Source of the DNA: Obrimoposthia wandeli
Lineage: Eukaryota
Length of the DNA: 64,000 nt
Reading direction: 5' to 3'
Assembly (NCBI GenBank): GCA_977020255.1
Contig: CDROCS010005463.1
Location: forward strand, 1-64,000
Below, piece by piece: positions 47,076-62,456 of the stretch. Every line of letters begins with the position of its first letter. The first letter of the stretch is position 1. Made by a program: the position numbers and the translations under genes. The notes below the pieces were generated by a model. That model did not search any database. It saw only the letters and a list, made by a program, of their open reading frames with translations, and was not told where the DNA came from.

Positions 47076-48005
47076 TTACAAGTTTGGTAAACACTCTTTC
47101 ATCTTCGTTTCGATAGCATTAATGCATAGCTGAACAACATAGGGCGTTGTTTGATTAAATGCATGGAGTCTATAGATAGGCTGCGCCATTAGTTGATATT
47201 GCGTGGTGATAATGGCTAGCTTTGAGCGCTCTTTTTCAGTGAGTTCACAGAGTAACAGTTGCGGAATTAATCCAACCCCTGCCCCTTGCTTTACCATACT
47301 TAATACGCCATTTACAGAGTTTGCAAAGCGGCTGGGCCGGTGCTTTAGCTCACATATATCCCTCTCTGACACATGGGTGAGTTGGTGCGTAACAACCGCC
47401 CCCTGCCATGTGTTAGCAATATAATTTAATGATAGGCTCAAGCGTGGGTCTGTTTGAATAGCTAAAACACTGATACCTTGTTGCTGTAAATACTGCTTAC
47501 TTACGCACAGATGATCAAGCAGTGTGCCAATGCGCTTTTGTTTAAGCTCGCTATCCTTTAATTGGCCGACACGAATCGCTAAATCGATATTGTCGGTGAG
47601 CAAATGAACACGTTGATCTTGGGCATACAAAGATGGAGTGATTTTAGGGTGTGTATTAACTAAAGCGCCGATTGTTGGGGCAATAATCGTATCCATTAAG
47701 GCATGAGGAGCGCTAATGCTAATGCTGCCAATCGCTTGTTCTTGTGCATTATAGGCATCGCTCCAAGCTTGTTTACCAATATCCGATATCTGTTTGCACT
47801 GTATGTAAAAGGCTTTACCTGCAGGGGTAAGTACTTGTCGTCTAGTGGTGCGTTTTAACAATTCGACATTGAGTTCTTTTTCGAGGGTACGAAGCTGCTG
47901 ACTCACAACAGATTTTGAAATGCCTAATTGCTCGGCACCCGCGCTAATAGAGCCTGCTTCTACTATCGTATTAAAAACCATCATGTGGCGTAAGTATTTC
48001 ATCAT
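47076..48005 (-). CDS. LysR family regulator
   Basis: GSISAGAEQLGISKSVVSQQL HTH; IDLAIRVG. Confidence 0.88.
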   Translation of the reverse strand: MMKYLRHMMVFNTIVEAGSISAGAEQLGISKSVVSQQLRTLEKELNVELLKRTTRRQVLTPAGKAFYIQCKQISDIGKQAWSDAYNAQEQAIGSISISAPHALMDTIIAPTIGALVNTHPKITPSLYAQDQRVHLLTDNIDLAIRVGQLKDSELKQKRIGTLLDHLCVSKQYLQQQGISVLAIQTDPRLSLSLNYIANTWQGAVVTHQLTHVSERDICELKHRPSRFANSVNGVLSMVKQGAGVGLIPQLLLCELTEKERSKLAIITTQYQLMAQPIYRLHAFNQTTPYVVQLCINAIETKMKECLPNL

Positions 48006-48115
48006 AATGTTCGTAATTATAGAACAAAGAGTAAGCTTTTTGTTCGTTTTTCTGTTCAATGTTATCGTTTAATATTCTGTCATTGGTTACTAACAGTATT
48101 TCTAAGGAGAAATGA

Positions 48116-48493
48116 ATGACAGCTCAGCAAAAAGACATAATGATTCAAGCAGTAAAAGAGGCGAGCAGCCGTTGGAAGGACGCTTTTAATTCAGGCAATG
48201 CAGCCTTATGTGCAGCGCAATATGAAGCAGAGGCTATTATGAACGCAAAGCCATTTGGCACGTTCATTGGCACAGCGCAAATTAGCGCGTTTTGGCAGCA
48301 GCTTATTGACGGTGGTTACAGTGATGTCGCATATATTGATCCACAAATTGAAGTGTTGGATGAACAACATGCGATCTTAAGTTCTGGTTGGAAAATGAAT
48401 AACGCAGCGGGTGTGATTACTCGCGAGCTTTGGGTGTTACAGGCAGATGGTAGTGCAAAATTGCGCGAAGATGATTTTGAAGCACTTGGCTAA
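48116..48493 (+). CDS. SnoaL/NTF2-like protein
   Basis: WKDAFNSGNAALCAAQYEAEA; divergent from LysR. Confidence 0.75.
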   Translation: MTAQQKDIMIQAVKEASSRWKDAFNSGNAALCAAQYEAEAIMNAKPFGTFIGTAQISAFWQQLIDGGYSDVAYIDPQIEVLDEQHAILSSGWKMNNAAGVITRELWVLQADGSAKLREDDFEALG

Positions 48494-49123
48494 AAAGAGC
48501 GAAACAGTGGCTAGTTGTTTACACTGGCCGCTTATAAAATATTAACGTAAATACACTAGACTCAATGTCTATATTAGGCTTAAAAACAGAGTGATTTTAA
48601 GCCTAATTAGCTTCTAATATTATCTCCAGCATTAGTTTTTTAGATAATTTCTTGCATAAAAACGCTCAATACTCCTTCTGAGCACCTCGTAACTCCCTAT
48701 CAAACCTGTAGAAATCGAAAAACATAAGAAAATCTGATGATATGTTAAAAAAATGCTATTTGTAATTATGTTTTTTGCAGAATATATTGAATGGACACTA
48801 CAAAGACAGCAAGCGATTTTAAAGAAGACAGCCTAACGACAGTTTTCTTGATTTGACTTACCTGTAGCGAGATACAATATTTATAGGGCACAAAGCAAAA
48901 ATAACCCCAGTAAACAATTGCTAGGGCTTGCTCTTAAGATCCTTATTATAAAAATAAATTAAAGCAAAATTGATTGATCAAACACTTATTCTGCGCATGC
49001 CATTAGCACCTATAATTGATGCACAGTAACTGTTTACTTGCATTATGCTCACAATACTTAAAGTTAAATGAGACATAATTTAAAGCTTGATCGAATCAAT
49101 GGATCACTAAAAGGGGCATATCT

Positions 49124-49600
49124 ATGGATAGTCTGGATAGAAGAAAAGTCGATGTTTTAGTTATGACGGTGCTTATCGTCGCATCTGTCGTCATATTAAC
49201 TAATGACAACTTAAGTGAAGGCGGGGCTGAAACTGATTTAGGTTCGTTATTTTTACCGCGCATAGTGGCAATTTTCATTATTATTTTCTCTTTGTTTATA
49301 GGAGCCACCTCGCTACATAAATTATTGTCAAAAAAGCAATTAGAAACCACAGAGACCATTACTTTAAATGGTTTTTTCGGGGTAAATATTTATGTGAGTA
49401 TCTTTGTACTCTATTGGTTCGTGACGCCTTACATCGGTTTTTTAATCGCAACACCCTTTGTCATGATAGGGGTTGCTATGCTTCTAGGTGGCCGTGATTG
49501 GTTGGCAATAGGCATTATGTCTGTGGTTGTGCCTATATTGATCTTCTACGGATCCAATCAATTCTTGCGGGTGTTCTTACCCACTTGGTCACTGTCTTAA
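49124..49600 (+). CDS. tctB: Tripartite tricarboxylate transporter small subunit
   Basis: Four TMs, FLPRIV, F..FLRVFLP; upstream of tctA. Confidence 0.8.
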   Translation: MDSLDRRKVDVLVMTVLIVASVVILTNDNLSEGGAETDLGSLFLPRIVAIFIIIFSLFIGATSLHKLLSKKQLETTETITLNGFFGVNIYVSIFVLYWFVTPYIGFLIATPFVMIGVAMLLGGRDWLAIGIMSVVVPILIFYGSNQFLRVFLPTWSLS

Positions 49601-49612
49601 GGAGGCGCAAAA

Positions 49613-51130
49613 ATGATTGATAATATCTTAAGTGGCTTCTCGTCAATTTTCGCAGTAGGTCCAATTTTAGGCATTATAGCCGGTGTGTTAGTGGGTATTA
49701 TATTTGGTGCGATTCCGGGTATATCGGGCATTATGGCTATCTCTATCATACTGCCGCTAACGTTTTATGTAGACCCTATCATCGGTATCACCATGTTGCT
49801 TGCTGTATATAAAGCGAGTATCTATGGCGGTTCTATATCGGCAATATTAATAAACACGCCAGGTGCAGCGGCGTCATTTTTGACTGCACTAGATGGCCAT
49901 GCATTAACCAAACAAGGGAAGTCCGGTAAAGCGCTCGATATCTCATTGTTTTCATCTGTAACGGGTGAGGCGCTGGCAACGTTAGTACTCATCTTTATTG
50001 CAGCGCCAATTTCTGCCATATCGCTACAAGCAGGACCGATTGAAAAAGTATTTTTACTGCTATTTGCCTTTACAGTAATTGGTTCTCTTGCCGGTGAATC
50101 TATCTCTCGCGGATTGCTCTCATGCTGTTTAGGTATGATCTTTGCCATGGTAGGGCTCTCATCAATCACCGGTGCTTCTCGCTTTACCTTTGGCGTAACA
50201 GAGTTAATGGCTGGCTTTACATTTATACCGATGTTGATCGGAATTCTGGTTATGCCCGAGGTGATAAATATTATCAGGCGACGCAGGCAGCCCCAACATG
50301 AGTTCGCTCTGCAAAAATCTACTAACAAGGCGGATAACCGTATAAGTTGGAGTGAGTATAAAGCGTTATTTGGAACCATTCTAAAGTCGACCGGTATCGG
50401 TACATTTATAGGGGCTTTACCGGGACTGGGTTCTAGTACCGCTGCATTTATTGCCTATGGTGAAGCGAAGCGTACCTCAAAAAATCCTGAGAAATTTGGT
50501 AAAGGTTCGGTCGAGGGAATCGCCGCAGCAGAGTCTGCAAACAATGCAGTATGTGGGTCTAGCTTAATCCCGATGTTGACCTTGAGTATTCCTGGAGATG
50601 ATGTTGCTGCACTATTAATGGGCGCTTTCTTGATCCACGGTTTAACGCCTGGGCCGATGATCTTTTTTGAACACACATCAACTATATATGCCATTTTTGC
50701 AGGCTTCTTGTTAACTGATCTGTTCTTGTTAGTCATTGCCCGCTCTGGTTTTAGATTTTTTACTAAAGTCGCTTCGTTGAAACGCCATTTTATATTCCCT
50801 TGCGTCACTGTATTTGCATTCACCGGTGCATTTACAACAGCACAAAATATGGATGACGTACTCATACTGATCTTGTTCACCATTATTGGTTATGCAATGC
50901 GCTTAATTGGTTTAAACCCAGCGGTGTTCATTATTGGATTTATTTTGACCCCGTTTTTAGAGCAAAACTTAGATCAAGCGCTGGCTATTGTCGGTGATGA
51001 TTACTATTTGTTTGTTGCCTCCCCTTTTTCATGGGTGTTCATCGCACTAGCGGTATTTTTTGTCGGCTCAAGTGTCCATATGAAAAAGAAACATGCCAAA
51101 ACGGATTCAACATCAACAGTAAAAGAGTAG
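49613..51130 (+). CDS. tctA: Tripartite tricarboxylate transporter large subunit
   Basis: GAIPGISG, YGGSISAILINTPG, AAESANNA, IPMLTLSIPGD. Confidence 0.93.
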   Translation: MIDNILSGFSSIFAVGPILGIIAGVLVGIIFGAIPGISGIMAISIILPLTFYVDPIIGITMLLAVYKASIYGGSISAILINTPGAAASFLTALDGHALTKQGKSGKALDISLFSSVTGEALATLVLIFIAAPISAISLQAGPIEKVFLLLFAFTVIGSLAGESISRGLLSCCLGMIFAMVGLSSITGASRFTFGVTELMAGFTFIPMLIGILVMPEVINIIRRRRQPQHEFALQKSTNKADNRISWSEYKALFGTILKSTGIGTFIGALPGLGSSTAAFIAYGEAKRTSKNPEKFGKGSVEGIAAAESANNAVCGSSLIPMLTLSIPGDDVAALLMGAFLIHGLTPGPMIFFEHTSTIYAIFAGFLLTDLFLLVIARSGFRFFTKVASLKRHFIFPCVTVFAFTGAFTTAQNMDDVLILILFTIIGYAMRLIGLNPAVFIIGFILTPFLEQNLDQALAIVGDDYYLFVASPFSWVFIALAVFFVGSSVHMKKKHAKTDSTSTVKE

Positions 51131-51247
51131 AAATTAACCACTGTGTAAGTTGCTCAAAGTAGTAGTGACTATGCAGGGGATTCGCAGAAAGTGATAAAGG
51201 TGAAAACTGAATATCATTAATAAATAAAAATAAAGAGGAAACAATAA

Positions 51248-52195
51248 ATGAAGCGTTTTAATAAAAAAGCAATCACTTTACTTTCAGCTGTCAGTATCAG
51301 CATAGCCTCAAGTGCAGTATTTGCTGCCTATCCAGAAAAGCCAATTAAGGTGATTGTACCTTATGGTGCGGGTGGTGATTCAGATTTAACCACACGTGTG
51401 TGGGCTGATGCGGTAGAAAAAGAACTGGGCGTACCTGTTATCGTTATCAATAAAAAAGGAGCGGGCGGCATTGTAGGCACCTCATTTGTTGCCAACTCTA
51501 AAAATGATGGTTATACGTTAATAAATGCAGGTTTGGGTAACATGTTAGTGACCCCAAACTTCAGTAAAACGCCGTATGATTTTTCAAGCTTTAAGCCAAT
51601 TTTGAAAATGACAGCGGTGCCTTTAGGCATTGTGGTTGCTAAAGATAGCCCTTACAAAAACTTTGAAGAGTTTATAGCAGGCGCTAAAGCTAAAACGCTG
51701 ACGCAAGGTTCATGGGGTGCTGCATCATCAGGCACTATATTAGCAAATATTATTGCTGATCAAGCGGGTTACAAGCCAAAGTATGTACATGGTAATACAA
51801 CGGCTGAATCTATGGTTTCAGTTGTTGGTGGACATATCGCTTCAGCCGTTTCTTTTCCACCTGCTTTTGGCCCACACGTAAAAGCTGATCGCGCTCGCTT
51901 GTTAGTGATGAACCAAAAAATGGATTTATATCCTGGGATTCCTACTTTTGCTGATTTTGGTATTAAAGGCAGCTTTGAAGGTTGGTCAGGTATTTTTGCA
52001 CCTAAAGGTGTACCACAAGAAGTGGTTGATAAGTTACTAGCGGCAACAACTAAGGCAATGAAAGACCCTAAAGTATTAAAAGCGTATGCAAATATGGGCG
52101 CGATTGTGAACTTTAGACACGGTGAAAAATGGGTATCTGATATGCAAGTAACCTATGAAATCATGAAAGAAGCATCAGCTAAAGTAAAAAAGTAA
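51248..52195 (+). CDS. tctC: Tripartite tricarboxylate transporter substrate-binding protein (Bug/TctC)
   Basis: YPEKPIKVIVPYGAGGDSD, NKKGAGG, DGYTL. Confidence 0.9.
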   Translation: MKRFNKKAITLLSAVSISIASSAVFAAYPEKPIKVIVPYGAGGDSDLTTRVWADAVEKELGVPVIVINKKGAGGIVGTSFVANSKNDGYTLINAGLGNMLVTPNFSKTPYDFSSFKPILKMTAVPLGIVVAKDSPYKNFEEFIAGAKAKTLTQGSWGAASSGTILANIIADQAGYKPKYVHGNTTAESMVSVVGGHIASAVSFPPAFGPHVKADRARLLVMNQKMDLYPGIPTFADFGIKGSFEGWSGIFAPKGVPQEVVDKLLAATTKAMKDPKVLKAYANMGAIVNFRHGEKWVSDMQVTYEIMKEASAKVKK

Positions 52196-52234
52196 GTTAG
52201 ATAGTGGTCCTTCTTATTAGGACCACAGATAGAA

Positions 52235-53167
52235 CTACCAGTGAGCGAATTGATCCGGACTTTCTATTAAAGAGTTAATTCGCTCGCGAATAAGTTGCGC
52301 AAAAACCAGTGTGATTCTCGATTTAGGGGAATCTGCAGGATACAAAATACTGACTTTTAAGTTGATATTGGGCTCAAACTTACGAAAGACGATTTTACCC
52401 GGTTGGCTATAGCTACAGTAGCTCGCGATAGTGAGTGGGTCCATGATACATACGCCTAAACCGCGCTCTACAAAGCGTAATGCAGGTATAAAAAAGCGCG
52501 TTTGTAAACGGACATTCATGTGGCTCTTGTGCTCAGAAAAAGCATTTTGTAGCGCGTGAAACGTCATGTGATCAGGGTGTAAAGTGATCATATCTATGTT
52601 GTCGAGTAATTGAGGTGTAATGATCTGGTGAGCTGCGAGCGGATGATCGGCAGGTATCGCACATAGGCAGCTAAGATCGAATGACTCACTGTCAAAGCTG
52701 TTCTCTTGAGAAGAGACTTCAGCTAGACCGATATCGTATTGGCTGGATGCAATCCACTCTTTTACGCCATCGGAGGTACGCGTTTGCATAGAAACCTGAA
52801 TCTTAGGGTGTTTTTCTAAAAAATCAGCAATTAAATCAGGCATGAAATAAGTAGAGGGGCCGGGCATACAGCCAATACGTAAAAATCCGAACTGTTTGTT
52901 TTTAATATCATTGACGGTTTGTGAAACGTCTTGAATACGGCTGAAAATAGACTCTATTTCGTTATATAAATAGTGCGCTTCAGGTGTTGGATACAGCCTT
53001 TTTTTACGTCTTTCAAACAACTGGAACCCGACAGCCTCTTCAAGCGAATTGATGAGCATGCTGACAGCAGGTTGGCTTTTATACAGTTGTTTTGCCGCTT
53101 GTGATACAGAGCCTGAGAGCATAACTGCCCTAAATGCTTCCATTTGTCTAAGGTTGATAACAGTCAC
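52235..53167 (-). CDS. LysR family regulator divergent from ridA
   Basis: NLRQMEAFRAVMLSGSVSQAAKQLYKSQPAVS. Confidence 0.92.
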   Translation of the reverse strand: MTVINLRQMEAFRAVMLSGSVSQAAKQLYKSQPAVSMLINSLEEAVGFQLFERRKKRLYPTPEAHYLYNEIESIFSRIQDVSQTVNDIKNKQFGFLRIGCMPGPSTYFMPDLIADFLEKHPKIQVSMQTRTSDGVKEWIASSQYDIGLAEVSSQENSFDSESFDLSCLCAIPADHPLAAHQIITPQLLDNIDMITLHPDHMTFHALQNAFSEHKSHMNVRLQTRFFIPALRFVERGLGVCIMDPLTIASYCSYSQPGKIVFRKFEPNINLKVSILYPADSPKSRITLVFAQLIRERINSLIESPDQFAHW

Positions 53168-53208
53168 CTTTATATAGTGTCAATTGAGTTTTAAGGGTCA
53201 ATATAAAT

Positions 53209-53223
53209 ATAAGATAAATTTAT
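53209..53223. promoter_or_regulatory. LysR-type recognition box
   Basis: ATAA-N7-TTAT (T-N11-A dyad) between divergent LysR and ridA. Confidence 0.5.
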
Positions 53224-53346
53224 GATTTGGTTTGTTTTCGATATTTATTTTATATAGTTTGAGTGGAAGAATACAGATATAGCGGTTAAAAATTAACGGT
53301 GTTGTAAACATTAATACCCGTAACAAATATAAATGAAGGAAAAAGC

Positions 53347-53697
53347 ATGACGACGCGATTAAACAAAAATCAACGTATGAGCCAAATTGTTATTCATGAC
53401 AATACAGTGTTGTTATCAGGCCAAGTAGCGAAAGATGCAACCGCTGATATTAGCGGTCAAACTCAGCAAATTTTAGCGCAAATAGATGCATTACTTGCAC
53501 AAGCTGGGTGCTCCAAGAGCGATTTGCTAAGTGCCAATATTTGGTTGAGTGATATCAGGCAGTTCCAGCAAATGAATGATGTTTGGGATGCATGGGTAGA
53601 TGTTGAAAACCCTCCTGTTCGCGCTTGCGTTGAAGCAAGACTGGCCCGCGTTGAATTGGTAGTTGAAATTCAAGTTAGCGCCGCTAAACACTCATAG
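53347..53697 (+). CDS. RidA/Rid family imine deaminase
   Basis: RMSQIV, LSGQVA, MNDVWDAW, PVRACV, VEIQVSAA. Confidence 0.9.
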   Translation: MTTRLNKNQRMSQIVIHDNTVLLSGQVAKDATADISGQTQQILAQIDALLAQAGCSKSDLLSANIWLSDIRQFQQMNDVWDAWVDVENPPVRACVEARLARVELVVEIQVSAAKHS

Positions 53698-53707
53698 GTT
53701 AAAATAT

Positions 53708-54982
53708 ATGACTAGCAATGCGCAACACAATGCCGATACAGCACCTGCAAATGTAGCGGTACTGGGAGCAGGTGTAATAGGTTTATCTTGTGCGATATGG
53801 TTACAAAAAGCAGGCTTTAAAGTCACTTTGATTGATGCCGAGAAGCCAGGTTTAGGTGCTTCTTTTGGTAATGCTGGGCTCTTTGCCGATTACGCAAGAT
53901 TACCTTTTGCAAACTTTTCAATGCTGCGAAAAGTGCCTAAAATGCTGGTGGATAAAAGTAGTCCACTGGCTATAGATCCCAGTTATTCGCCGGCTTTAAT
54001 GCGCTACGCTAAAGAGTATTTAAAAGCCTGTGGCACAAAGCGCTATGAAGCAGGTAAGCAAGGTTTACTCAACTTACATAGTATTGCCAGACAAGCAGAT
54101 CAAAGCTTAATTAAAGCGGCTAGCAGTGAGCATTTAATTACACAGCAAGGGTTTTTAGGCTTATTTTCAGACGAGGATAGTTTTCAGCAAGCCCAAGCAG
54201 GTTTTATTGAAAGAGAGCAGCAAGGGGCAAAGTTGGAGCTGTTAAATAGTGCGCAAATTAAAGCACTAGAGCCACAACTCAATATGCCATTTAGTGGCGC
54301 TGTGTACTATCCCAATACCTACCATACGCTAGACCCTCAATTGTATTGTGAATCCTTATTTACACTCTTTGTTAAGAATGGAGGAGTTTTTAGGCAAGAA
54401 AAAATCACCCAAATTGCGCCTATAAACCAGCAATCAGCGATTGAGTTGCGCAGCGTATTAGAAACGAAACAGTACGACCAATTAGTGATTGCGACAGGTG
54501 CCGCAACTAAACCTTTGGTAGAGCAATTGCGTTTAAGCATTCCGCAAGTGTGTGAGCGTGGTTATCATTTAATGCTTAAAGAGAGCGCATTTAAACTTAC
54601 CCGCCCAATCGCTTGGATGAACCATGGGGTACACATGACTCCCATGAAAAATGCAGTACGTGTGGCGGGAACAGCAGAATACACCGCCAATGACTCACCA
54701 CCTAGTGAGAAAAGAAAAGCGGTGATGTTAGCGCATGCAAAGCAAATGCTAGGCGCTGATATTGAGGTGGAATCAAGTTGGGTAGGCAGTAGGCCTACAA
54801 CGCCCGATTCATTGCCAGTTATTTCCAAAATTAAAAACCAGCCTAACGTTACCCTCGCTTTTGGGCACGGTCATTTAGGTCTCACGTTAGCGGCTACGAC
54901 GGGTAAAATAGTTTCGCAGCTGGTGTCTAACCAGCCATTGGATGTTGATATCAGCGCCTTCTCAGCCGAACGATTTAATTAA
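53708..54982 (+). CDS. FAD-dependent D-amino-acid dehydrogenase/oxidase (DadA-like)
   Basis: GAGVIG, GASFGNAG, ERGYH, WVGSRPTTPDSLPVI, AFGHGHLGLT. Confidence 0.88.
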   Translation: MTSNAQHNADTAPANVAVLGAGVIGLSCAIWLQKAGFKVTLIDAEKPGLGASFGNAGLFADYARLPFANFSMLRKVPKMLVDKSSPLAIDPSYSPALMRYAKEYLKACGTKRYEAGKQGLLNLHSIARQADQSLIKAASSEHLITQQGFLGLFSDEDSFQQAQAGFIEREQQGAKLELLNSAQIKALEPQLNMPFSGAVYYPNTYHTLDPQLYCESLFTLFVKNGGVFRQEKITQIAPINQQSAIELRSVLETKQYDQLVIATGAATKPLVEQLRLSIPQVCERGYHLMLKESAFKLTRPIAWMNHGVHMTPMKNAVRVAGTAEYTANDSPPSEKRKAVMLAHAKQMLGADIEVESSWVGSRPTTPDSLPVISKIKNQPNVTLAFGHGHLGLTLAATTGKIVSQLVSNQPLDVDISAFSAERFN

Positions 54983-55055
54983 ATGCAGCCTGACTCATCA
55001 AAGAGGCACATTCTATTCTACCGATTAAAACAGCCGTCCCTTGAGATAAAAAGCC

Positions 55056-55115
55056 TCTAGGTTTTAAACGTCTAGGTTTTAAATATTTAGGTTTTAAAAT
55101 TCTGGGTTTTAAGTA
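55056..55115. repeat. Four tandem 15-bp repeats
   Basis: tctaggttttaaacg / tctaggttttaaata / tttaggttttaaaat / tctgggttttaagta. Confidence 0.9.
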
Positions 55116-55218
55116 CCTAAAATAAGTCGCTCCATTTAACGAAAACGAGCAGACTTTCTTCAGAGGTTGTTAACCATAAACGCTAAAGCACATAAATTTA
55201 ACGAGTTGAGAGAGTAAA

Positions 55219-55938
55219 ATGACAATTATGAAAGGCGGTTTTAATTATTACAGCATTCCTATTGGAGTGATTTGCCTAGAGTCCTATTTCCCCAAGCCTA
55301 TTGGTCATATAAAACACCCGGCAGGATTCGATTTTCCAGTACTGTATAAAACAGTACAAGGTGCGACAATAGAGCGTTTAATTGGGCAGCGAGACAGACA
55401 GTTACTACAGCCTTTTATTGAAGCGGCACAAGAATTAGAGCGTGAAGGCGTTAAAGCGATTACCGCAAGTTGCGGCTTTTTGGCGTTATTTCAGCGAGAA
55501 ATAGCGGATGCTGTGGATATACCGGTATTTATTTCAAGCCTTATTCAAATACCGTTGATCTATCAGAGTTTGGGCCGTCATAGAAAAGTTGGTGTGGTTG
55601 TAGCGAACAGTGATGCCTTAAGTGCAGAGCATTTAGCAGCGGTAGGGGCTGAGCATGTGCCAATTGCTTTGGCGGGCATGCAGCATCAGCCTCAATTTGC
55701 TGATGTTATCTTAAAGAGCAATAATAACGATTTAGACTTAACAGTGTTTAGGGATGAGTTATTTAGTGTCATTGAACAAATGCTAAGTGAAAATAAAAAC
55801 ATAGGCTCAATCGTACTAGAGTGCACTGATTTATCTCATTTTGCGGTGCAAGTACAAGAGCGTTTTAAATTACCAGTTTATGATTTGACTAGCTTAACGC
55901 GTATGGTGGCCGCCACAGTTGAACGCAAAATAGCATAA
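55219..55938 (+). CDS. Asp/Glu/hydantoin racemase superfamily protein
   Basis: Two catalytic-type Cys: TASCGFL and VLECTDL. Confidence 0.8.
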   Translation: MTIMKGGFNYYSIPIGVICLESYFPKPIGHIKHPAGFDFPVLYKTVQGATIERLIGQRDRQLLQPFIEAAQELEREGVKAITASCGFLALFQREIADAVDIPVFISSLIQIPLIYQSLGRHRKVGVVVANSDALSAEHLAAVGAEHVPIALAGMQHQPQFADVILKSNNNDLDLTVFRDELFSVIEQMLSENKNIGSIVLECTDLSHFAVQVQERFKLPVYDLTSLTRMVAATVERKIA

Positions 55939-55999
55939 TTAGAGAAGACTATATAAGCCTTAATGTATGTCTACATAAGGCTTAACTTCACACGACTTA

Positions 56000-56965
56000 C
56001 TATGAAATTAAAATAGATCCATTGTTTAGCTGATCATCAATTAGTAATTGGCGGGCAGCTTTAGCAACGGGTCCAGGTTTACCGTTACCGACAGCTTTGC
56101 CTGCCACTTCAACAACAGGTAATGCATCTAAAGTAGTGCCGACCATAAATACCTCTTTGGCATTTTGTAAACCACTGGCCTGCTGCTTTTCTTCTCTCAT
56201 CTCACGAATTAATCCCTGCTCAACCAATGCAGGTGATAATTCTTGTAACCTAAGCAATGTTGTTCCCCTTAGGGTGTGATCAAAACTAGAGAAAATCAAG
56301 TCATTGTCTTGGGTTAAATACGCAATGTTTTCTGTAGGTCCTTCACCAAGATCACCTTCATCAGTCACATTAATAACAAAGTTTAGCTTGTTATCAACCG
56401 CTTCTTTGCTCATCAATACGTTGGATAAATAGTTACACGATTTAGTTTTTGCCATCCCTCCGCTTTTTACTGCAACATCGCTAAAACCAATTTTAGCGCC
56501 CTCTTCATATAATTTATCAGCAGGGTTGTTTAGTGTAGAAACGATAAGATAAAGTTGTGGGCCAATGGATGCATATGGGTTAGGTGTAAAGCCACCTGGA
56601 CCACGAGATGCGTATAATCTAAATAACGCATTGTGTAAGCCACATACTTCAATTAGCTGCTTACATATCGCCTTTATTTCGTCTTTATCGTGTTTTAAGT
56701 CGAGATAAATATCAGCGGCAGAACGCTCTAATCTTGCTAGGTGCTCATCAAATAAGAATACTTTCCCATCAACCATTTTAAAGGCTTCGAAGACGCCATC
56801 TCCACGATGCACTAAATGGTCATCTACTGGAATTGTCATTAGTTTAGGATCAGTGGTAATACCGCCAAACACGCTAGAGTACATTACGTGATAATCACCC
56901 TGTGCTTTATAGCTAGGGCAGGCGGCTACTATTTGTTCCAACGTGTCATATACCGGAAAAGTCAT
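56000..56965 (-). CDS. PLP fold-type IV aminotransferase (D-amino-acid transaminase-like)
   Basis: DDHLVHRGDGVFEAF, HLARLERSA, KTKSCNY (catalytic Lys), EGPTEN, RGTT. Confidence 0.85.
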   Translation of the reverse strand: MTFPVYDTLEQIVAACPSYKAQGDYHVMYSSVFGGITTDPKLMTIPVDDHLVHRGDGVFEAFKMVDGKVFLFDEHLARLERSAADIYLDLKHDKDEIKAICKQLIEVCGLHNALFRLYASRGPGGFTPNPYASIGPQLYLIVSTLNNPADKLYEEGAKIGFSDVAVKSGGMAKTKSCNYLSNVLMSKEAVDNKLNFVINVTDEGDLGEGPTENIAYLTQDNDLIFSSFDHTLRGTTLLRLQELSPALVEQGLIREMREEKQQASGLQNAKEVFMVGTTLDALPVVEVAGKAVGNGKPGPVAKAARQLLIDDQLNNGSILIS

Positions 56966-56996
56966 AATTAAAACCTTATTATTAATATATTGTAGG

Positions 56997-57081
56997 TAGT
57001 GTCCGTCCAGAAACGGGGCCATTGTGTGGCTGTTTCAATGGTTCGAGATGGGCACTAGGTAGATTAGGCTTCGCCTTAATC
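56997..57081 (+). repeat. Interspersed element copy B (56997-57057, with terminal inverted repeats) abutting a GATTAGGCTTCGCCTTAATC hairpin
   Basis: TAGTGTCCGTC...GATGGGCACTA; core shared with 10784-10843. Confidence 0.85.
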
Positions 57082-61544: not shown

Positions 61545-62456
61545 ATGTTACTTTTTGAAAAGATACCCACCTCTCAAAGTTTGCTTATCTTTGAAGCGGC
61601 CGCTCGTCATAAAAGCTTTACGGGTGCAGCGAGAGAGATAGGGTCAACTCAATCAGCGATAAGCCAGCAAATAAAAGGCTTAGAAGCGAGCTTAGGGCTC
61701 GTGCTTTTTCAGCGGGTTTATCGAGGAGTGTCTCTCACCGAAGAGGGGCACTCGCTGTATGAAGCAGTACAAAGCGGGTTTGGCCAAATAGCAACGTGCT
61801 TAGATAAGTTGCAAAAAAACCATGCCCACCAAGTGGTAAATGTCGCAACTGACTTTGCACTTGCCGCATATTGGCTATTACCTAAGCTGCCGCGTTTTCG
61901 GGAATTACACCCGAAAATTGATGTGCGTATTATTACTTCACAGGGCCAGCATGATTTTTTTGGGCAAAACGTAGATATAGCGATTGTGTTTGCTGGGCCC
62001 AAAACGTTACCTGATTATGCGTTTAAGCTATTTAATGAAGAGGTTTTCCCTGTTTGTAGCCCGGCGTTTTTAGCGGCAAATGCACCAGTGAATAGTCATA
62101 AAAAGCTGGCCACACTGCCGCTGTTAAAACTGGGAACAGATGCCGGGCAAGGGTGGTTTGATTGGCATAGTTATTTTCAGGGGCGGCGCAGTCAAATGTT
62201 ACCGACTGAACCGGTGCTTACCTTTAATAACTATACTTTACTCATTCAAGCGGCAATTGCAGGGCAGGGAGTTGGTTTAGGTTGGTCTACATTGGTAGAT
62301 GATTTAATTGATAGTAAAATTTTAGTAGGGCTAAGGGAGTTTAGCTTGAACTCTGATAATGGTTATTATGTCGTTGAGCCTAAGCCAAATGAGCAAGTAC
62401 TTGCCAAACAGCACTTTATGGATTGGTTATTACAAGAGAGCTTGTTGATGCAATAG
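61545..62456 (+). CDS. LysR (GcvA-like) choline-sulfate utilisation regulator
   Basis: FEAAARHKSFTGAA, ATDFALAAYWLLPKL; divergent from betC. Confidence 0.88.
   Translation: MLLFEKIPTSQSLLIFEAAARHKSFTGAAREIGSTQSAISQQIKGLEASLGLVLFQRVYRGVSLTEEGHSLYEAVQSGFGQIATCLDKLQKNHAHQVVNVATDFALAAYWLLPKLPRFRELHPKIDVRIITSQGQHDFFGQNVDIAIVFAGPKTLPDYAFKLFNEEVFPVCSPAFLAANAPVNSHKKLATLPLLKLGTDAGQGWFDWHSYFQGRRSQMLPTEPVLTFNNYTLLIQAAIAGQGVGLGWSTLVDDLIDSKILVGLREFSLNSDNGYYVVEPKPNEQVLAKQHFMDWLLQESLLMQ

What the first reader, a model, noticed from the sequence alone, without database searches (positions are those of the whole stretch)
49124..56965. Candidate undescribed D-amino-acid / imino-diacid catabolic system fed by a tripartite tricarboxylate transporter
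Seen: tctB-tctA-tctC, a LysR divergent from ridA plus a DadA-like FAD dehydrogenase, a two-Cys racemase-superfamily gene and a convergent fold-IV aminotransferase. Established: DadA-type enzymes oxidise D-amino acids to imino acids that Rid proteins hydrolyse. Fold-IV enzymes with Arg in the first motif are typically D-amino-acid transaminases. TTT systems are known for carboxylates (citrate, terephthalate, sulfolactate), not amino acids. Inference: uptake and stereo-inversion/deamination of a carboxylate-rich D-configured substrate such as D-Asp/D-Glu or a marine-invertebrate opine (strombine, alanopine, octopine). The LysR looks to me like the OccR/NocR opine-regulator class. I know of no described pathway with this gene set.
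Basis: partly seen in the sequence, partly recalled or inferred. Interest (0 to 1): 0.75.

Follow-up and report, generated by a model that had tools for sequence, protein, structure and literature searches.

The report
Conserved racemase–D-amino-acid dehydrogenase uptake cluster
A seven-gene block (carboxylate importer, regulator, imine deaminase, D-amino-acid dehydrogenase and an uncharacterised two-cysteine racemase) is kept together in dozens of marine bacteria and most likely imports and deaminates an acidic amino acid such as D/L-glutamate; it extends known D-amino-acid pathways and is not an opine system.

Summary
Comparison with 80 related loci shows that seven form a real unit: tctB-tctA-tctC, a LysR regulator, a Rid2-type imine deaminase, a DadA-like FAD dehydrogenase and a two-Cys racemase of the uncharacterised PRK07475 subfamily. 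In 31 of 37 relatives with enough flank all seven co-occur, in two different gene orders and with unrelated flanks. The fold-IV aminotransferase occurs in only one relative and is not part of the unit. A palindromic LysR-type box (ATAAG-N5-YTKAT) has just two matches in the 64 kb window, one before tctB and one before rid, and it recurs upstream of rid in 29 of 45 relatives. The Rid protein is about 50% identical to PA5083, which lies in the Pseudomonas aeruginosa D-glutamate locus dguRABC. The TctC is closest, among solved structures, to the glutamate-binding BugE. More distant racemase/dehydrogenase pairs use TAXI-TRAP or polar-amino-acid ABC importers instead. Best reading: a dad/dgu-like racemise-then-oxidise route for an anionic amino acid, with glutamate first and aspartate second. 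The substrate is unproven. The opine and OccR ideas, and the claim that TTT systems are unknown for amino acids, are not supported. This is a new variant of a known kind, of moderate interest. The scan's earlier notes hold no similar finding.

The parts
48724..48738 (+). Putative LysR-type (T-N11-A) box ATAAGAAAATCTGAT, about 400 bp upstream of tctB
   Evidence: One of only two matches to ATAAG-N5-YTKAT in the 64 kb window. The identical 15-mer lies upstream of rid in L014, L019, L037 and L043.
49124..49600 (+). tctB, small membrane subunit of a tripartite tricarboxylate transporter
   Evidence: PF07331, E 2e-13. Conserved next to tctA in 33 of 37 full-flank relatives.
49613..51130 (+). tctA, large permease subunit
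   Evidence: PF01970, 455 bits. 80-93% identical in relatives.
51248..52195 (+). tctC, periplasmic solute-binding protein with a signal peptide and the AGGxxD carboxylate 'pincer' loop
   Evidence: PF03401, 155 bits. Best solved matches are 2dvz BugE (2.4e-37), 4x9t and 2f5x BugD. The sequence PYGAGGDSD matches the Ala15-Gly16-Gly17-Asp20 loop of BugD (PMC5812351).
52235..53167 (-). LysR-type transcriptional regulator of the cluster
   Evidence: HTH_1 plus LysR_substrate domains. Conserved in 36 of 37 full-flank relatives. 28% identical to E. coli LysR.
53209..53223 (+). Putative LysR box ATAAGATAAATTTAT in the lysR/rid divergent promoter region
   Evidence: Conserved block in the alignment of the four closest relatives. 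The box class is enriched upstream of rid: 29 of 45 loci against 0.03 expected per 500 bp.
53347..53697 (+). Rid2-subfamily imine/enamine deaminase
   Evidence: PF01042. Best solved match is PA5083 (9bjv), E 4e-25, about 50% identity over 112 residues, with the catalytic Arg retained (PPVRACVEA).
53708..54982 (+). DadA-like FAD-dependent D-amino-acid dehydrogenase, a divergent member
   Evidence: PF01266 at 210 bits. PRK00711 at 211 bits, below its 383 cutoff. 26% identical to E. coli DadA over the full length. GxGxxG motif near the N-terminus. Adjacent to the racemase in 46 of 48 close relatives.
55219..55938 (+). PLP-independent two-Cys racemase/epimerase of the uncharacterised PRK07475 subfamily
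   Evidence: PF01177. PRK07475 at 263 bits against a 231 cutoff. C85 and C202 are invariant. AlphaFold model pLDDT 81. Foldseek top hits are aspartate racemase 1jfl, hydantoin racemase 2eq5 and arylmalonate decarboxylase at 20% identity or less. No sequence-level PDB match.
56000..57022 (-). Fold-IV aminotransferase; a neighbour, not part of the conserved unit
   Evidence: PF01063. Found beside the racemase only in the window and L002.

Best explanation
This is a self-contained, LysR-controlled module for uptake and deamination of an alpha-amino acid that is recognised through a carboxylate. D/L-glutamate is the best candidate and D/L-aspartate the second. TctC binds the substrate in the periplasm and TctAB import it. 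The two-Cys racemase interconverts the L and D forms. The membrane-linked DadA-like flavoenzyme oxidises the D form to the 2-imino acid. The Rid2 protein hydrolyses the imine to the 2-oxo acid (2-oxoglutarate or oxaloacetate) plus ammonium, and the oxo acid enters the TCA cycle with no further dedicated enzyme. The LysR regulator, acting at ATAAG-N5-YTKAT boxes before tctB and before rid, induces both transcription units. Shown here: gene identities, conservation of the unit, the two boxes, and the family relationships. Inferred: the direction of flux, the substrate, and the regulator-box interaction.
For: Gene families were identified. The unit is conserved: among 48 loci whose racemase is at least 60% identical, 46 have the dadA-like gene within 400 bp. 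Of the 37 loci with at least 7 kb of upstream sequence, 31 carry all six partner genes. Two gene orders exist (tct divergent in 33 loci, co-directional in 6). The loci span Oceanospirillaceae, Oleiphilus, Halopseudomonas and Azoarcus; Thauera has a partial locus. The flanks differ (GNAT, LysE, Ogt, MFS, AraC, RarD), so no further catabolic enzyme is linked and the product should be a central metabolite. The Rid protein is about 50% identical to PA5083. PA5083 lies in PA5081-5086, a cluster linked to D-Glu/D-Gln utilisation (PMC11324955), whose regulator DguR is LysR-type (PMC10926688). TctC is closest to the glutamate-bound BugE and keeps the carboxylate pincer loop. In more distant racemase/dehydrogenase pairs the importer is swapped for TAXI-TRAP (the one solved TAXI protein was described as glutamate/glutamine-binding) or for a polar-amino-acid ABC system, while the enzyme pair persists. 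Gamma-glutamyltransferase follows the racemase in three loci (L067, L073, L078). The box occurs only twice in 64 kb, at the two promoters, and is enriched in relatives. The logic mirrors E. coli dadA-dadX.
Against: No experiment or expression data exist; no RNA run holds this DNA. The substrate is inferred from weak indicators. TctC is only about as similar to BugE as to 4x9t, whose ligand is unknown. TTT binding proteins also take monocarboxylates such as nicotinate. The window Rid matches other Rid2 proteins almost as well as PA5083. The ABC binding protein in distant loci is nearest to LAO/GlnH models, not to a Glu/Asp model. The dehydrogenase falls below every curated cutoff and is 26% identical to E. 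coli DadA. I could not obtain DguA or DguR sequences for direct comparison. D-Glu oxidation alone, as in the dgu system, needs no racemase, so the racemase's role is assumed by analogy with dadX.
Confidence: 0.55

Rival explanations
1. The mechanism is the same (import, racemise, oxidise the D form, hydrolyse the imine), but the substrate is a non-proteinogenic or sulfonated amino acid. Candidates are D/L-cysteate, 2-aminoadipate, 3-hydroxy- or 3-methyl-aspartate, N-methyl-D-aspartate and meso-diaminopimelate released from peptidoglycan.
For: The racemase belongs to no characterised subfamily and has only a weak superfamily-level hit to cysteate racemase CuyB (28 bits). A TTT system for sulfolactate is known (PMC5812351). 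Two paralogous racemase/dehydrogenase clusters coexist in single genomes (L048/L080 and L043/L053), so the family has more than one specificity. The regulator's nearest curated model is PRK11013, and by direct comparison it is 28% identical to E. coli LysR. From memory, E. coli LysR senses diaminopimelate.
Against: No sulfopyruvate, sulfolactate or other downstream enzyme is linked in any of about 45 loci. The CuyB score is far below its 190 cutoff. Identity to E. coli LysR is only 28%.
Confidence: 0.22
2. One reading: the cluster takes up and cleaves an opine-type imino-diacid (strombine, alanopine, octopine). The DadA-like enzyme acts as an opine oxidase or dehydrogenase and the LysR is an OccR/NocR-class regulator.
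For: DAO-family flavoenzymes can oxidise secondary amines, and TTT suits dicarboxylates. In Desulfobacterales the racemase homologue sits beside an OCD/mu-crystallin enzyme whose nearest models include SbnB, which cleaves an opine-like intermediate, together with an SBP_bac_8 ABC system. MmgE/PrpD proteins, a family that from memory includes iminodisuccinate epimerase, follow the racemase in three Hyphomicrobiales loci.
Against: OccR is only the 13th solved match of the LysR, and no opine-regulator model ranks among the top NCBIfam hits. There is no second oxidase subunit and no Occ/Noc-type ABC importer in the window. A racemase has no obvious role in opine cleavage. The Rid2 match to PA5083 and the gamma-glutamyltransferase neighbours point to free amino acids.
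Confidence: 0.07
3. The unit is not primarily catabolic. It balances or detoxifies D-amino acids taken up accidentally, or it supplies a D-amino acid for another process, with the dehydrogenase removing the excess.
For: Racemases run in both directions. Rid proteins are often described as damage-control enzymes (PMC5619798).
Against: A dedicated high-affinity importer under the same LysR box argues for deliberate acquisition. No biosynthetic consumer is linked.
Confidence: 0.08

Closest known systems
Pseudomonas aeruginosa dguRABC (PA5081-PA5086 region), D-Glu/D-Gln utilisation
   Same: Both have a LysR-type regulator (DguR) controlling an operon that holds a D-amino-acid dehydrogenase (from memory) and a Rid2 protein. 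The window Rid is about 50% identical to PA5083.
   Different: The dgu locus has an ABC-type binding protein (DguC) and no racemase (both from memory). Here the importer is a complete TTT system and a PLP-independent racemase is always attached. Orthology of the dehydrogenase and regulator to DguA and DguR could not be tested because their sequences were not obtainable.
dadAX / dadRAX (E. coli, P. aeruginosa), L-alanine catabolism through racemase plus D-amino-acid dehydrogenase
   Same: The two-step logic is the same: racemase, then a membrane FAD D-amino-acid dehydrogenase. The genes are adjacent in both cases.
   Different: DadX is a PLP-dependent alanine racemase, whereas this racemase is a two-Cys cofactor-independent enzyme. 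The dehydrogenase is 26% identical to DadA. The regulator class differs, and here an importer is included.
Bordetella pertussis BugE and BugD (TTT solute-binding proteins)
   Same: They are the best and third-best solved matches of this TctC, with the same carboxylate pincer loop. They were crystallised with glutamate and aspartate bound.
   Different: The Bug proteins are orphan binding proteins without a linked catabolic operon. Similarity is modest (E 1e-37 to 1e-32), and ligand-specific residues were not compared.
CuyB/CuyA cysteate racemase plus D-cysteate sulfo-lyase (Bilophila wadsworthia)
   Same: An Asp/Glu-superfamily racemase feeds a D-specific catabolic enzyme (PMC11193023).
   Different: The window racemase scores 28 bits against the CuyB model (cutoff 190), and no sulfo-lyase or sulfite-handling gene is linked.
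DgcN/DgcA N-acetylation route for D-glutamate in marine Proteobacteria (Yu et al. 2023, cited in PMC12363236)
   Same: It occupies the same ecological niche: marine bacteria recycling D-Glu.
   Different: The chemistry is entirely different (acetylate, racemise the N-acetyl form, deacetylate). No acetyltransferase or deacetylase belongs to this unit. The paper itself was not readable here.

Membership tests
Tripartite tricarboxylate transporter (TctABC) | Three components: TctA large permease, TctB small membrane protein, TctC periplasmic binding protein | tested here: met
   PF01970 at 455 bits, PF07331 at 51 bits and PF03401 at 155 bits, all above their cutoffs.
Tripartite tricarboxylate transporter (TctABC) | Conserved beta1-alpha1 loop (AGGxxD) that holds the waters bridging the ligand's proximal carboxylate | tested here: met
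   PYGAGGDSD follows the signal peptide, matching BugD Ala15-Gly16-Gly17-Asp20 (PMC5812351).
dguRABC-type D-glutamate locus | Rid2 protein of the PA5083 (DguB) type | tested here: met
   Best PDB match is 9bjv PA5083, E 4e-25, about 50% identity, full length. PSPTO_0102 scores equally, so the match is at subfamily level.
dguRABC-type D-glutamate locus | LysR-type regulator next to the dehydrogenase operon | tested here: inconclusive
   A LysR-type regulator is present and conserved. DguR is LysR-type (PMC10926688).
dguRABC-type D-glutamate locus | DguA-type D-glutamate dehydrogenase and D-Glu specificity | not testable with these tools
   Only family-level assignment was possible (PRK00711 at 211 bits against a 383 cutoff). 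No DguA sequence or assay was available.
dguRABC-type D-glutamate locus | ABC-type periplasmic binding protein DguC | tested here: not met
   The importer here is TTT. SBP_bac_3 ABC systems appear only in distant paralogous clusters (L053, L054, L056).
dadAX alanine catabolic pair | DadA orthologue plus PLP-dependent alanine racemase DadX | tested here: not met
   26% identity to E. coli DadA. The racemase is PF01177 with two Cys, not an alanine racemase.
Asp/Glu/hydantoin racemase superfamily | Pseudo-symmetric two-domain fold with one catalytic Cys at the N-terminus of a helix in each domain | tested here: met
   PF01177 at 40 bits against a 31 cutoff. C85 and C202 are invariant in 13 sequences and each follows a strand and opens a helix in the model. 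Foldseek probability is 1.00 to 1jfl and 2eq5. ECTD aligns with the GCTE motif of YgeA.
Characterised racemase subfamilies (aspartate racemase TIGR00035, cysteate racemase CuyB, EutA) | Score above the curated cutoff | tested here: not met
   TIGR00035 scores 21 against 93 and CuyB 28 against 190. There is no EutA hit. Only PRK07475 'hypothetical protein' passes.
Opine catabolic regulon (occ/noc) | OccR/NocR-class LysR, two-subunit opine oxidase, Occ/Noc ABC importer | tested here: not met
   OccR is the 13th PDB match at 5e-13, against 2e-28 for a CbbR. There is a single DAO-family gene and a TTT importer.
Canonical D-amino-acid transaminase (fold IV) | Score above the DAAT model cutoff; RxH carboxylate-binding motif (recalled from Bacillus DAAT) | tested here: not met
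   TIGR01121 scores 95 against 277. The best model is BCAT-like PRK08320 at 130 against 363. The second motif reads FRLYASRGPGGF, without RxH. The motif comparison was made from memory.

The most novel reading that the evidence does not exclude
The PRK07475 racemases are a new catabolic, cofactor-independent amino-acid racemase family that is obligatorily paired with a dedicated D-amino-acid dehydrogenase. The window cluster would then be the first TTT importer genetically tied to (D-)amino-acid catabolism. Its true substrate could be a marine or peptidoglycan-derived D-configured amino acid other than Glu, for example D-aspartate, N-methyl-D-aspartate, D-cysteate or meso-diaminopimelate. The two racemase clades that coexist in single genomes would have distinct specificities.
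Probability: 0.25. Interest if true: 0.6.

Novelty: new variant of a known kind. Interest (0 to 1): 0.45.

Why it matters
D-amino acids from peptidoglycan are a sizeable, slowly recycled part of marine dissolved organic nitrogen, and few bacterial routes for D-Glu and D-Asp are known. This cluster offers four things. It is a compact, testable candidate route that is widespread in Oceanospirillaceae and present in cultured strains. It gives a genetic context for assigning a physiological amino-acid substrate to a TTT transporter, a family whose members are still mostly without an assigned substrate. It gives a first functional handle on the PRK07475 racemase subfamily, which has no solved structure and, as far as I could find, no characterised member. 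It also supplies a candidate LysR operator for building a biosensor. If the substrate proves to be plain glutamate, the advance is incremental.

Tried and rejected
- Literature: searches combining TTT, racemase and D-amino-acid dehydrogenase, or TctC, D-amino acid and racemase, found nothing relevant. The dguRABC paper and the DgcN/DgcA paper are not held.
- Expression: no RNA run holds the region.
- An apparent NAD-glutamate dehydrogenase next to the cluster in L053 is a 166-aa fragment beside a phage integrase. I rejected it as evidence for glutamate.
- The racemase has no sequence-level match in the PDB. Foldseek places it only at superfamily level, so no substrate could be read from structure.
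- OccR-like regulator: rejected.
- The aminotransferase as part of the pathway: rejected on conservation.
- CuyB membership: rejected.
- E. coli LysR/YgeA as a parallel: the regulator is only 28% identical and the racemases are not significantly similar.
- I could not obtain PA5084 (DguA) or PA5085 (DguR).


Full report
**Observation**

- tctB is at 49124-49600, tctA at 49613-51130 and tctC at 51248-52195.
- A LysR-type regulator lies on the minus strand at 52235-53167.
- Diverging from it are a Rid-family gene (53347-53697) and a DadA-like FAD oxidoreductase. The dehydrogenase ORF runs from 53663, but the likely ATG is at 53708. It ends at 54982.
- An Asp/Glu/hydantoin-racemase-superfamily gene is at 55219-55938.
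- A convergent class-IV aminotransferase is at 56000-57022.
- The surrounding genes are unrelated. Upstream are a PhnD-type ABC system, a second LysR and a SnoaL-like gene. Downstream are CMD, AraC, OpuAC, a choline sulfatase and a further LysR-type regulator gene at 61545-62456.
- GC content is even across the region.

**Is the grouping real?**

I used the racemase, the most specific gene, to pull 80 loci with up to 10 kb flanks from one genome per species. I mapped the window proteins onto them by tblastn and clustered all ORFs.
- 48 loci have a racemase at least 60% identical to the window's. In 46 of them the dadA-like gene lies within 400 bp.
- 37 of those loci have at least 7 kb of upstream sequence. 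Among these, 36 have the LysR, 33-35 have each tct gene, 33 have rid, and 31 have all six partners.
- The block exists in two arrangements. In 33 loci tctBAC-lysR diverges from rid-dadA-rac. In 6 loci, including the window, tctBAC is co-directional and lysR is flipped between the two groups. Linkage therefore survived rearrangement.
- Carriers include Motiliproteus, Amphritea, Neptunomonas, Neptuniibacter, Marinobacterium, Pontibacterium, Oceanospirillum, Oleiphilus, Halopseudomonas and Azoarcus; Thauera has a partial locus. With a more divergent racemase, Cellvibrionaceae also carry it.
- The flanks are unrelated from genus to genus: GNATs, LysE, Ogt, MFS, AraC and RarD.
- The fold-IV aminotransferase accompanies the racemase only in the window and its closest relative, L002. 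It is a neighbour, not a member.

**Regulation**

The lysR-rid spacer of the four closest relatives shares a block containing ATAAGATAAATTTAT.
- Generalised to ATAAG-N5-YTKAT, a T-N11-A palindrome of the LysR type, the box occurs in the 500 bp upstream of rid in 29 of 45 relatives. The background is 0.03 per 500 bp in the same loci.
- In the whole 64 kb window it occurs exactly twice: at 53209-53223 (lysR/rid spacer) and at 48724-48738, in the 630 bp spacer before tctB.
- The count of two is not above chance. The placement is. The tctB site is an independent test, because the pattern was derived from the rid side and from relatives.
- This supports one regulon of two transcription units.
- The generic promoter and terminator scans were uninformative.

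**The parts**

- *TctC.* It has a signal peptide and the AGGxxD loop. In BugD this loop holds the two waters that bind the ligand's proximal carboxylate (PMC5812351). Its best solved matches are BugE (2dvz, crystallised with glutamate), 4x9t (ligand unknown) and BugD (2f5x, aspartate). TTT binding proteins for amino acids are therefore already known.
- *Rid.* It keeps the catalytic arginine. Its best solved match, full length at about 50% identity, is PA5083 of P. aeruginosa, a Rid2 protein with demonstrated imine deaminase activity (PMC5619798). PA5083 lies within PA5081-5086, which is linked to D-Glu/D-Gln utilisation (PMC11324955). Its regulator DguR is LysR-type (PMC10926688).
- *Dehydrogenase.* It is DadA-like over its full length but divergent: 26% identity to E. 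coli DadA and below all curated cutoffs.
- *Racemase.* It passes only the uninformative PRK07475 model. It has invariant SCGF and ECTD cysteines and no sequence match in the PDB. The model (pLDDT 81) matches aspartate racemase, hydantoin racemase and arylmalonate decarboxylase at 20% identity or less. Two cysteines argue against a decarboxylase and for a racemase or epimerase.
- *LysR.* Its nearest curated model is PRK11013, and it is 28% identical to E. coli LysR. OccR is an unremarkable 13th among solved matches.

**Distant relatives as a guide to substrate**

A quick maximum-likelihood tree splits the racemases into two clades. Clade A has 42 rows, is almost all TTT-linked and contains the window. 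Clade B has 22 rows.
- In clade B the racemase/dehydrogenase pair persists, but the importer changes. Some loci have a TAXI-TRAP system (TIGR02122 and TIGR02123, above cutoffs). Others have a polar-amino-acid ABC system (SBP_bac_3, nearest to LAO/GlnH). Three Cellvibrionaceae-type loci have TTT.
- Those three loci also carry a gamma-glutamyltransferase directly after the racemase (TIGR00066, above cutoff).
- Desulfobacterales lack the flavoenzyme. They pair the racemase with an OCD/mu-crystallin dehydrogenase, an SBP_bac_8 ABC system and a GntR regulator. This is a plausible anaerobic substitute for a quinone-linked dehydrogenase.
- Single genomes can hold both clades (L048 with L080; L043 with L053), so the two clades probably differ in specificity.
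- An apparent glutamate dehydrogenase next to L053 is only a gene fragment beside an integrase, and I discarded it.

**Mechanism**

The unit contains an importer, a regulator and three enzymes, and nothing else is linked. The end product should therefore be a central metabolite. The chemistry of the three enzymes fits the dadAX logic: racemise, oxidise the D enantiomer with a flavoenzyme, and hydrolyse the released imine with Rid.

Five observations make an anionic amino acid the best candidate, with glutamate ahead of aspartate: a carboxylate-dependent importer, TAXI or polar-amino-acid alternatives in relatives, a Rid2 of the DguB type, gamma-glutamyltransferase neighbours, and an Asp/Glu-superfamily racemase. 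I put about 0.55 on this reading as stated, and roughly 0.35 on glutamate specifically.

The main rival (0.22) is the same mechanism on another amino acid, such as cysteate, aminoadipate, hydroxyaspartate, NMDA or diaminopimelate. The opine reading (0.07) lacks any positive marker and leaves the racemase without a role.

**Comparison with known systems and novelty**

The cluster works like dadAX and dguRABC but is a member of neither.
- The racemase is cofactor-independent, not PLP-dependent.
- The importer is TTT, not ABC.
- The dehydrogenase is a separate branch of the DadA-like family.
- No paper in the searchable library describes the combination. That library is incomplete, and the key dgu paper could not be read.

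I rate it a new variant of a known kind. Its value lies in giving a TTT system and an uncharacterised racemase family a testable physiological role in marine D-amino-acid recycling.

**Limits**

- There is no expression or biochemical evidence.
- Substrate assignment rests on weak, convergent hints.
- The tree is the quick version; the careful search did not finish.
- The motif reading of the aminotransferase and some facts about dguRABC gene functions come from memory.

Noticed in passing
window 55056-55112: A 15-bp tandem repeat (consensus TCTAGGTTTTAAAAA, 3.8 copies) sits in the unusually long 236-bp spacer between the dehydrogenase and racemase genes. Relatives have much shorter spacers (about 10-90 bp in the loci whose ORFs were listed). 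There are no other exact copies in the window.
   Followed up: partly
L027:5800-10000 (Aliamphritea spongicola JCM 16668, AP025283.1): tctA, tctB, lysR and the dadA-like gene are each split over several reading frames, while tctC and the racemase are intact. This is either indel errors in the assembly or decay of the cluster.
   Followed up: partly
for example L018:10800-11800, L034 and L037 (22 Oceanospirillaceae loci): A RarD-type EamA transporter (TIGR00688, above cutoff) lies downstream of and co-directional with the racemase in many Oceanospirillaceae relatives, but is absent from the window. It could be an exporter linked to the pathway or simply inherited synteny.
   Followed up: partly
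L053:9479-11796: A 166-aa fragment of the large NAD-glutamate dehydrogenase, followed by a phage-type integrase, abuts the rid gene. The racemase of this Motiliproteus MAG is nearly identical to Burkholderiaceae copies (L054, L056), which suggests transfer or mis-binning.
   Followed up: partly
L057, L062, L071 (Hyphomicrobiales), downstream of the racemase: An MmgE/PrpD-family protein follows the racemase, and a universal stress protein sits between the TAXI permease and the dehydrogenase, in three loci. The role is unknown.
   Followed up: no
window 47076-48493 and L001:2149-3566: A second LysR with a divergent SnoaL/DUF4440-like gene lies immediately upstream of tctB in the window and in L001 only. 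It is not conserved with the cluster.
   Followed up: partly
L082:5022-6636 (E. coli K-12): E. coli lysR is adjacent to ygeA, an Asp/Glu-superfamily amino-acid racemase. This superficially parallels the LysR-plus-racemase pairing here, but the racemases are not significantly similar.
   Followed up: yes
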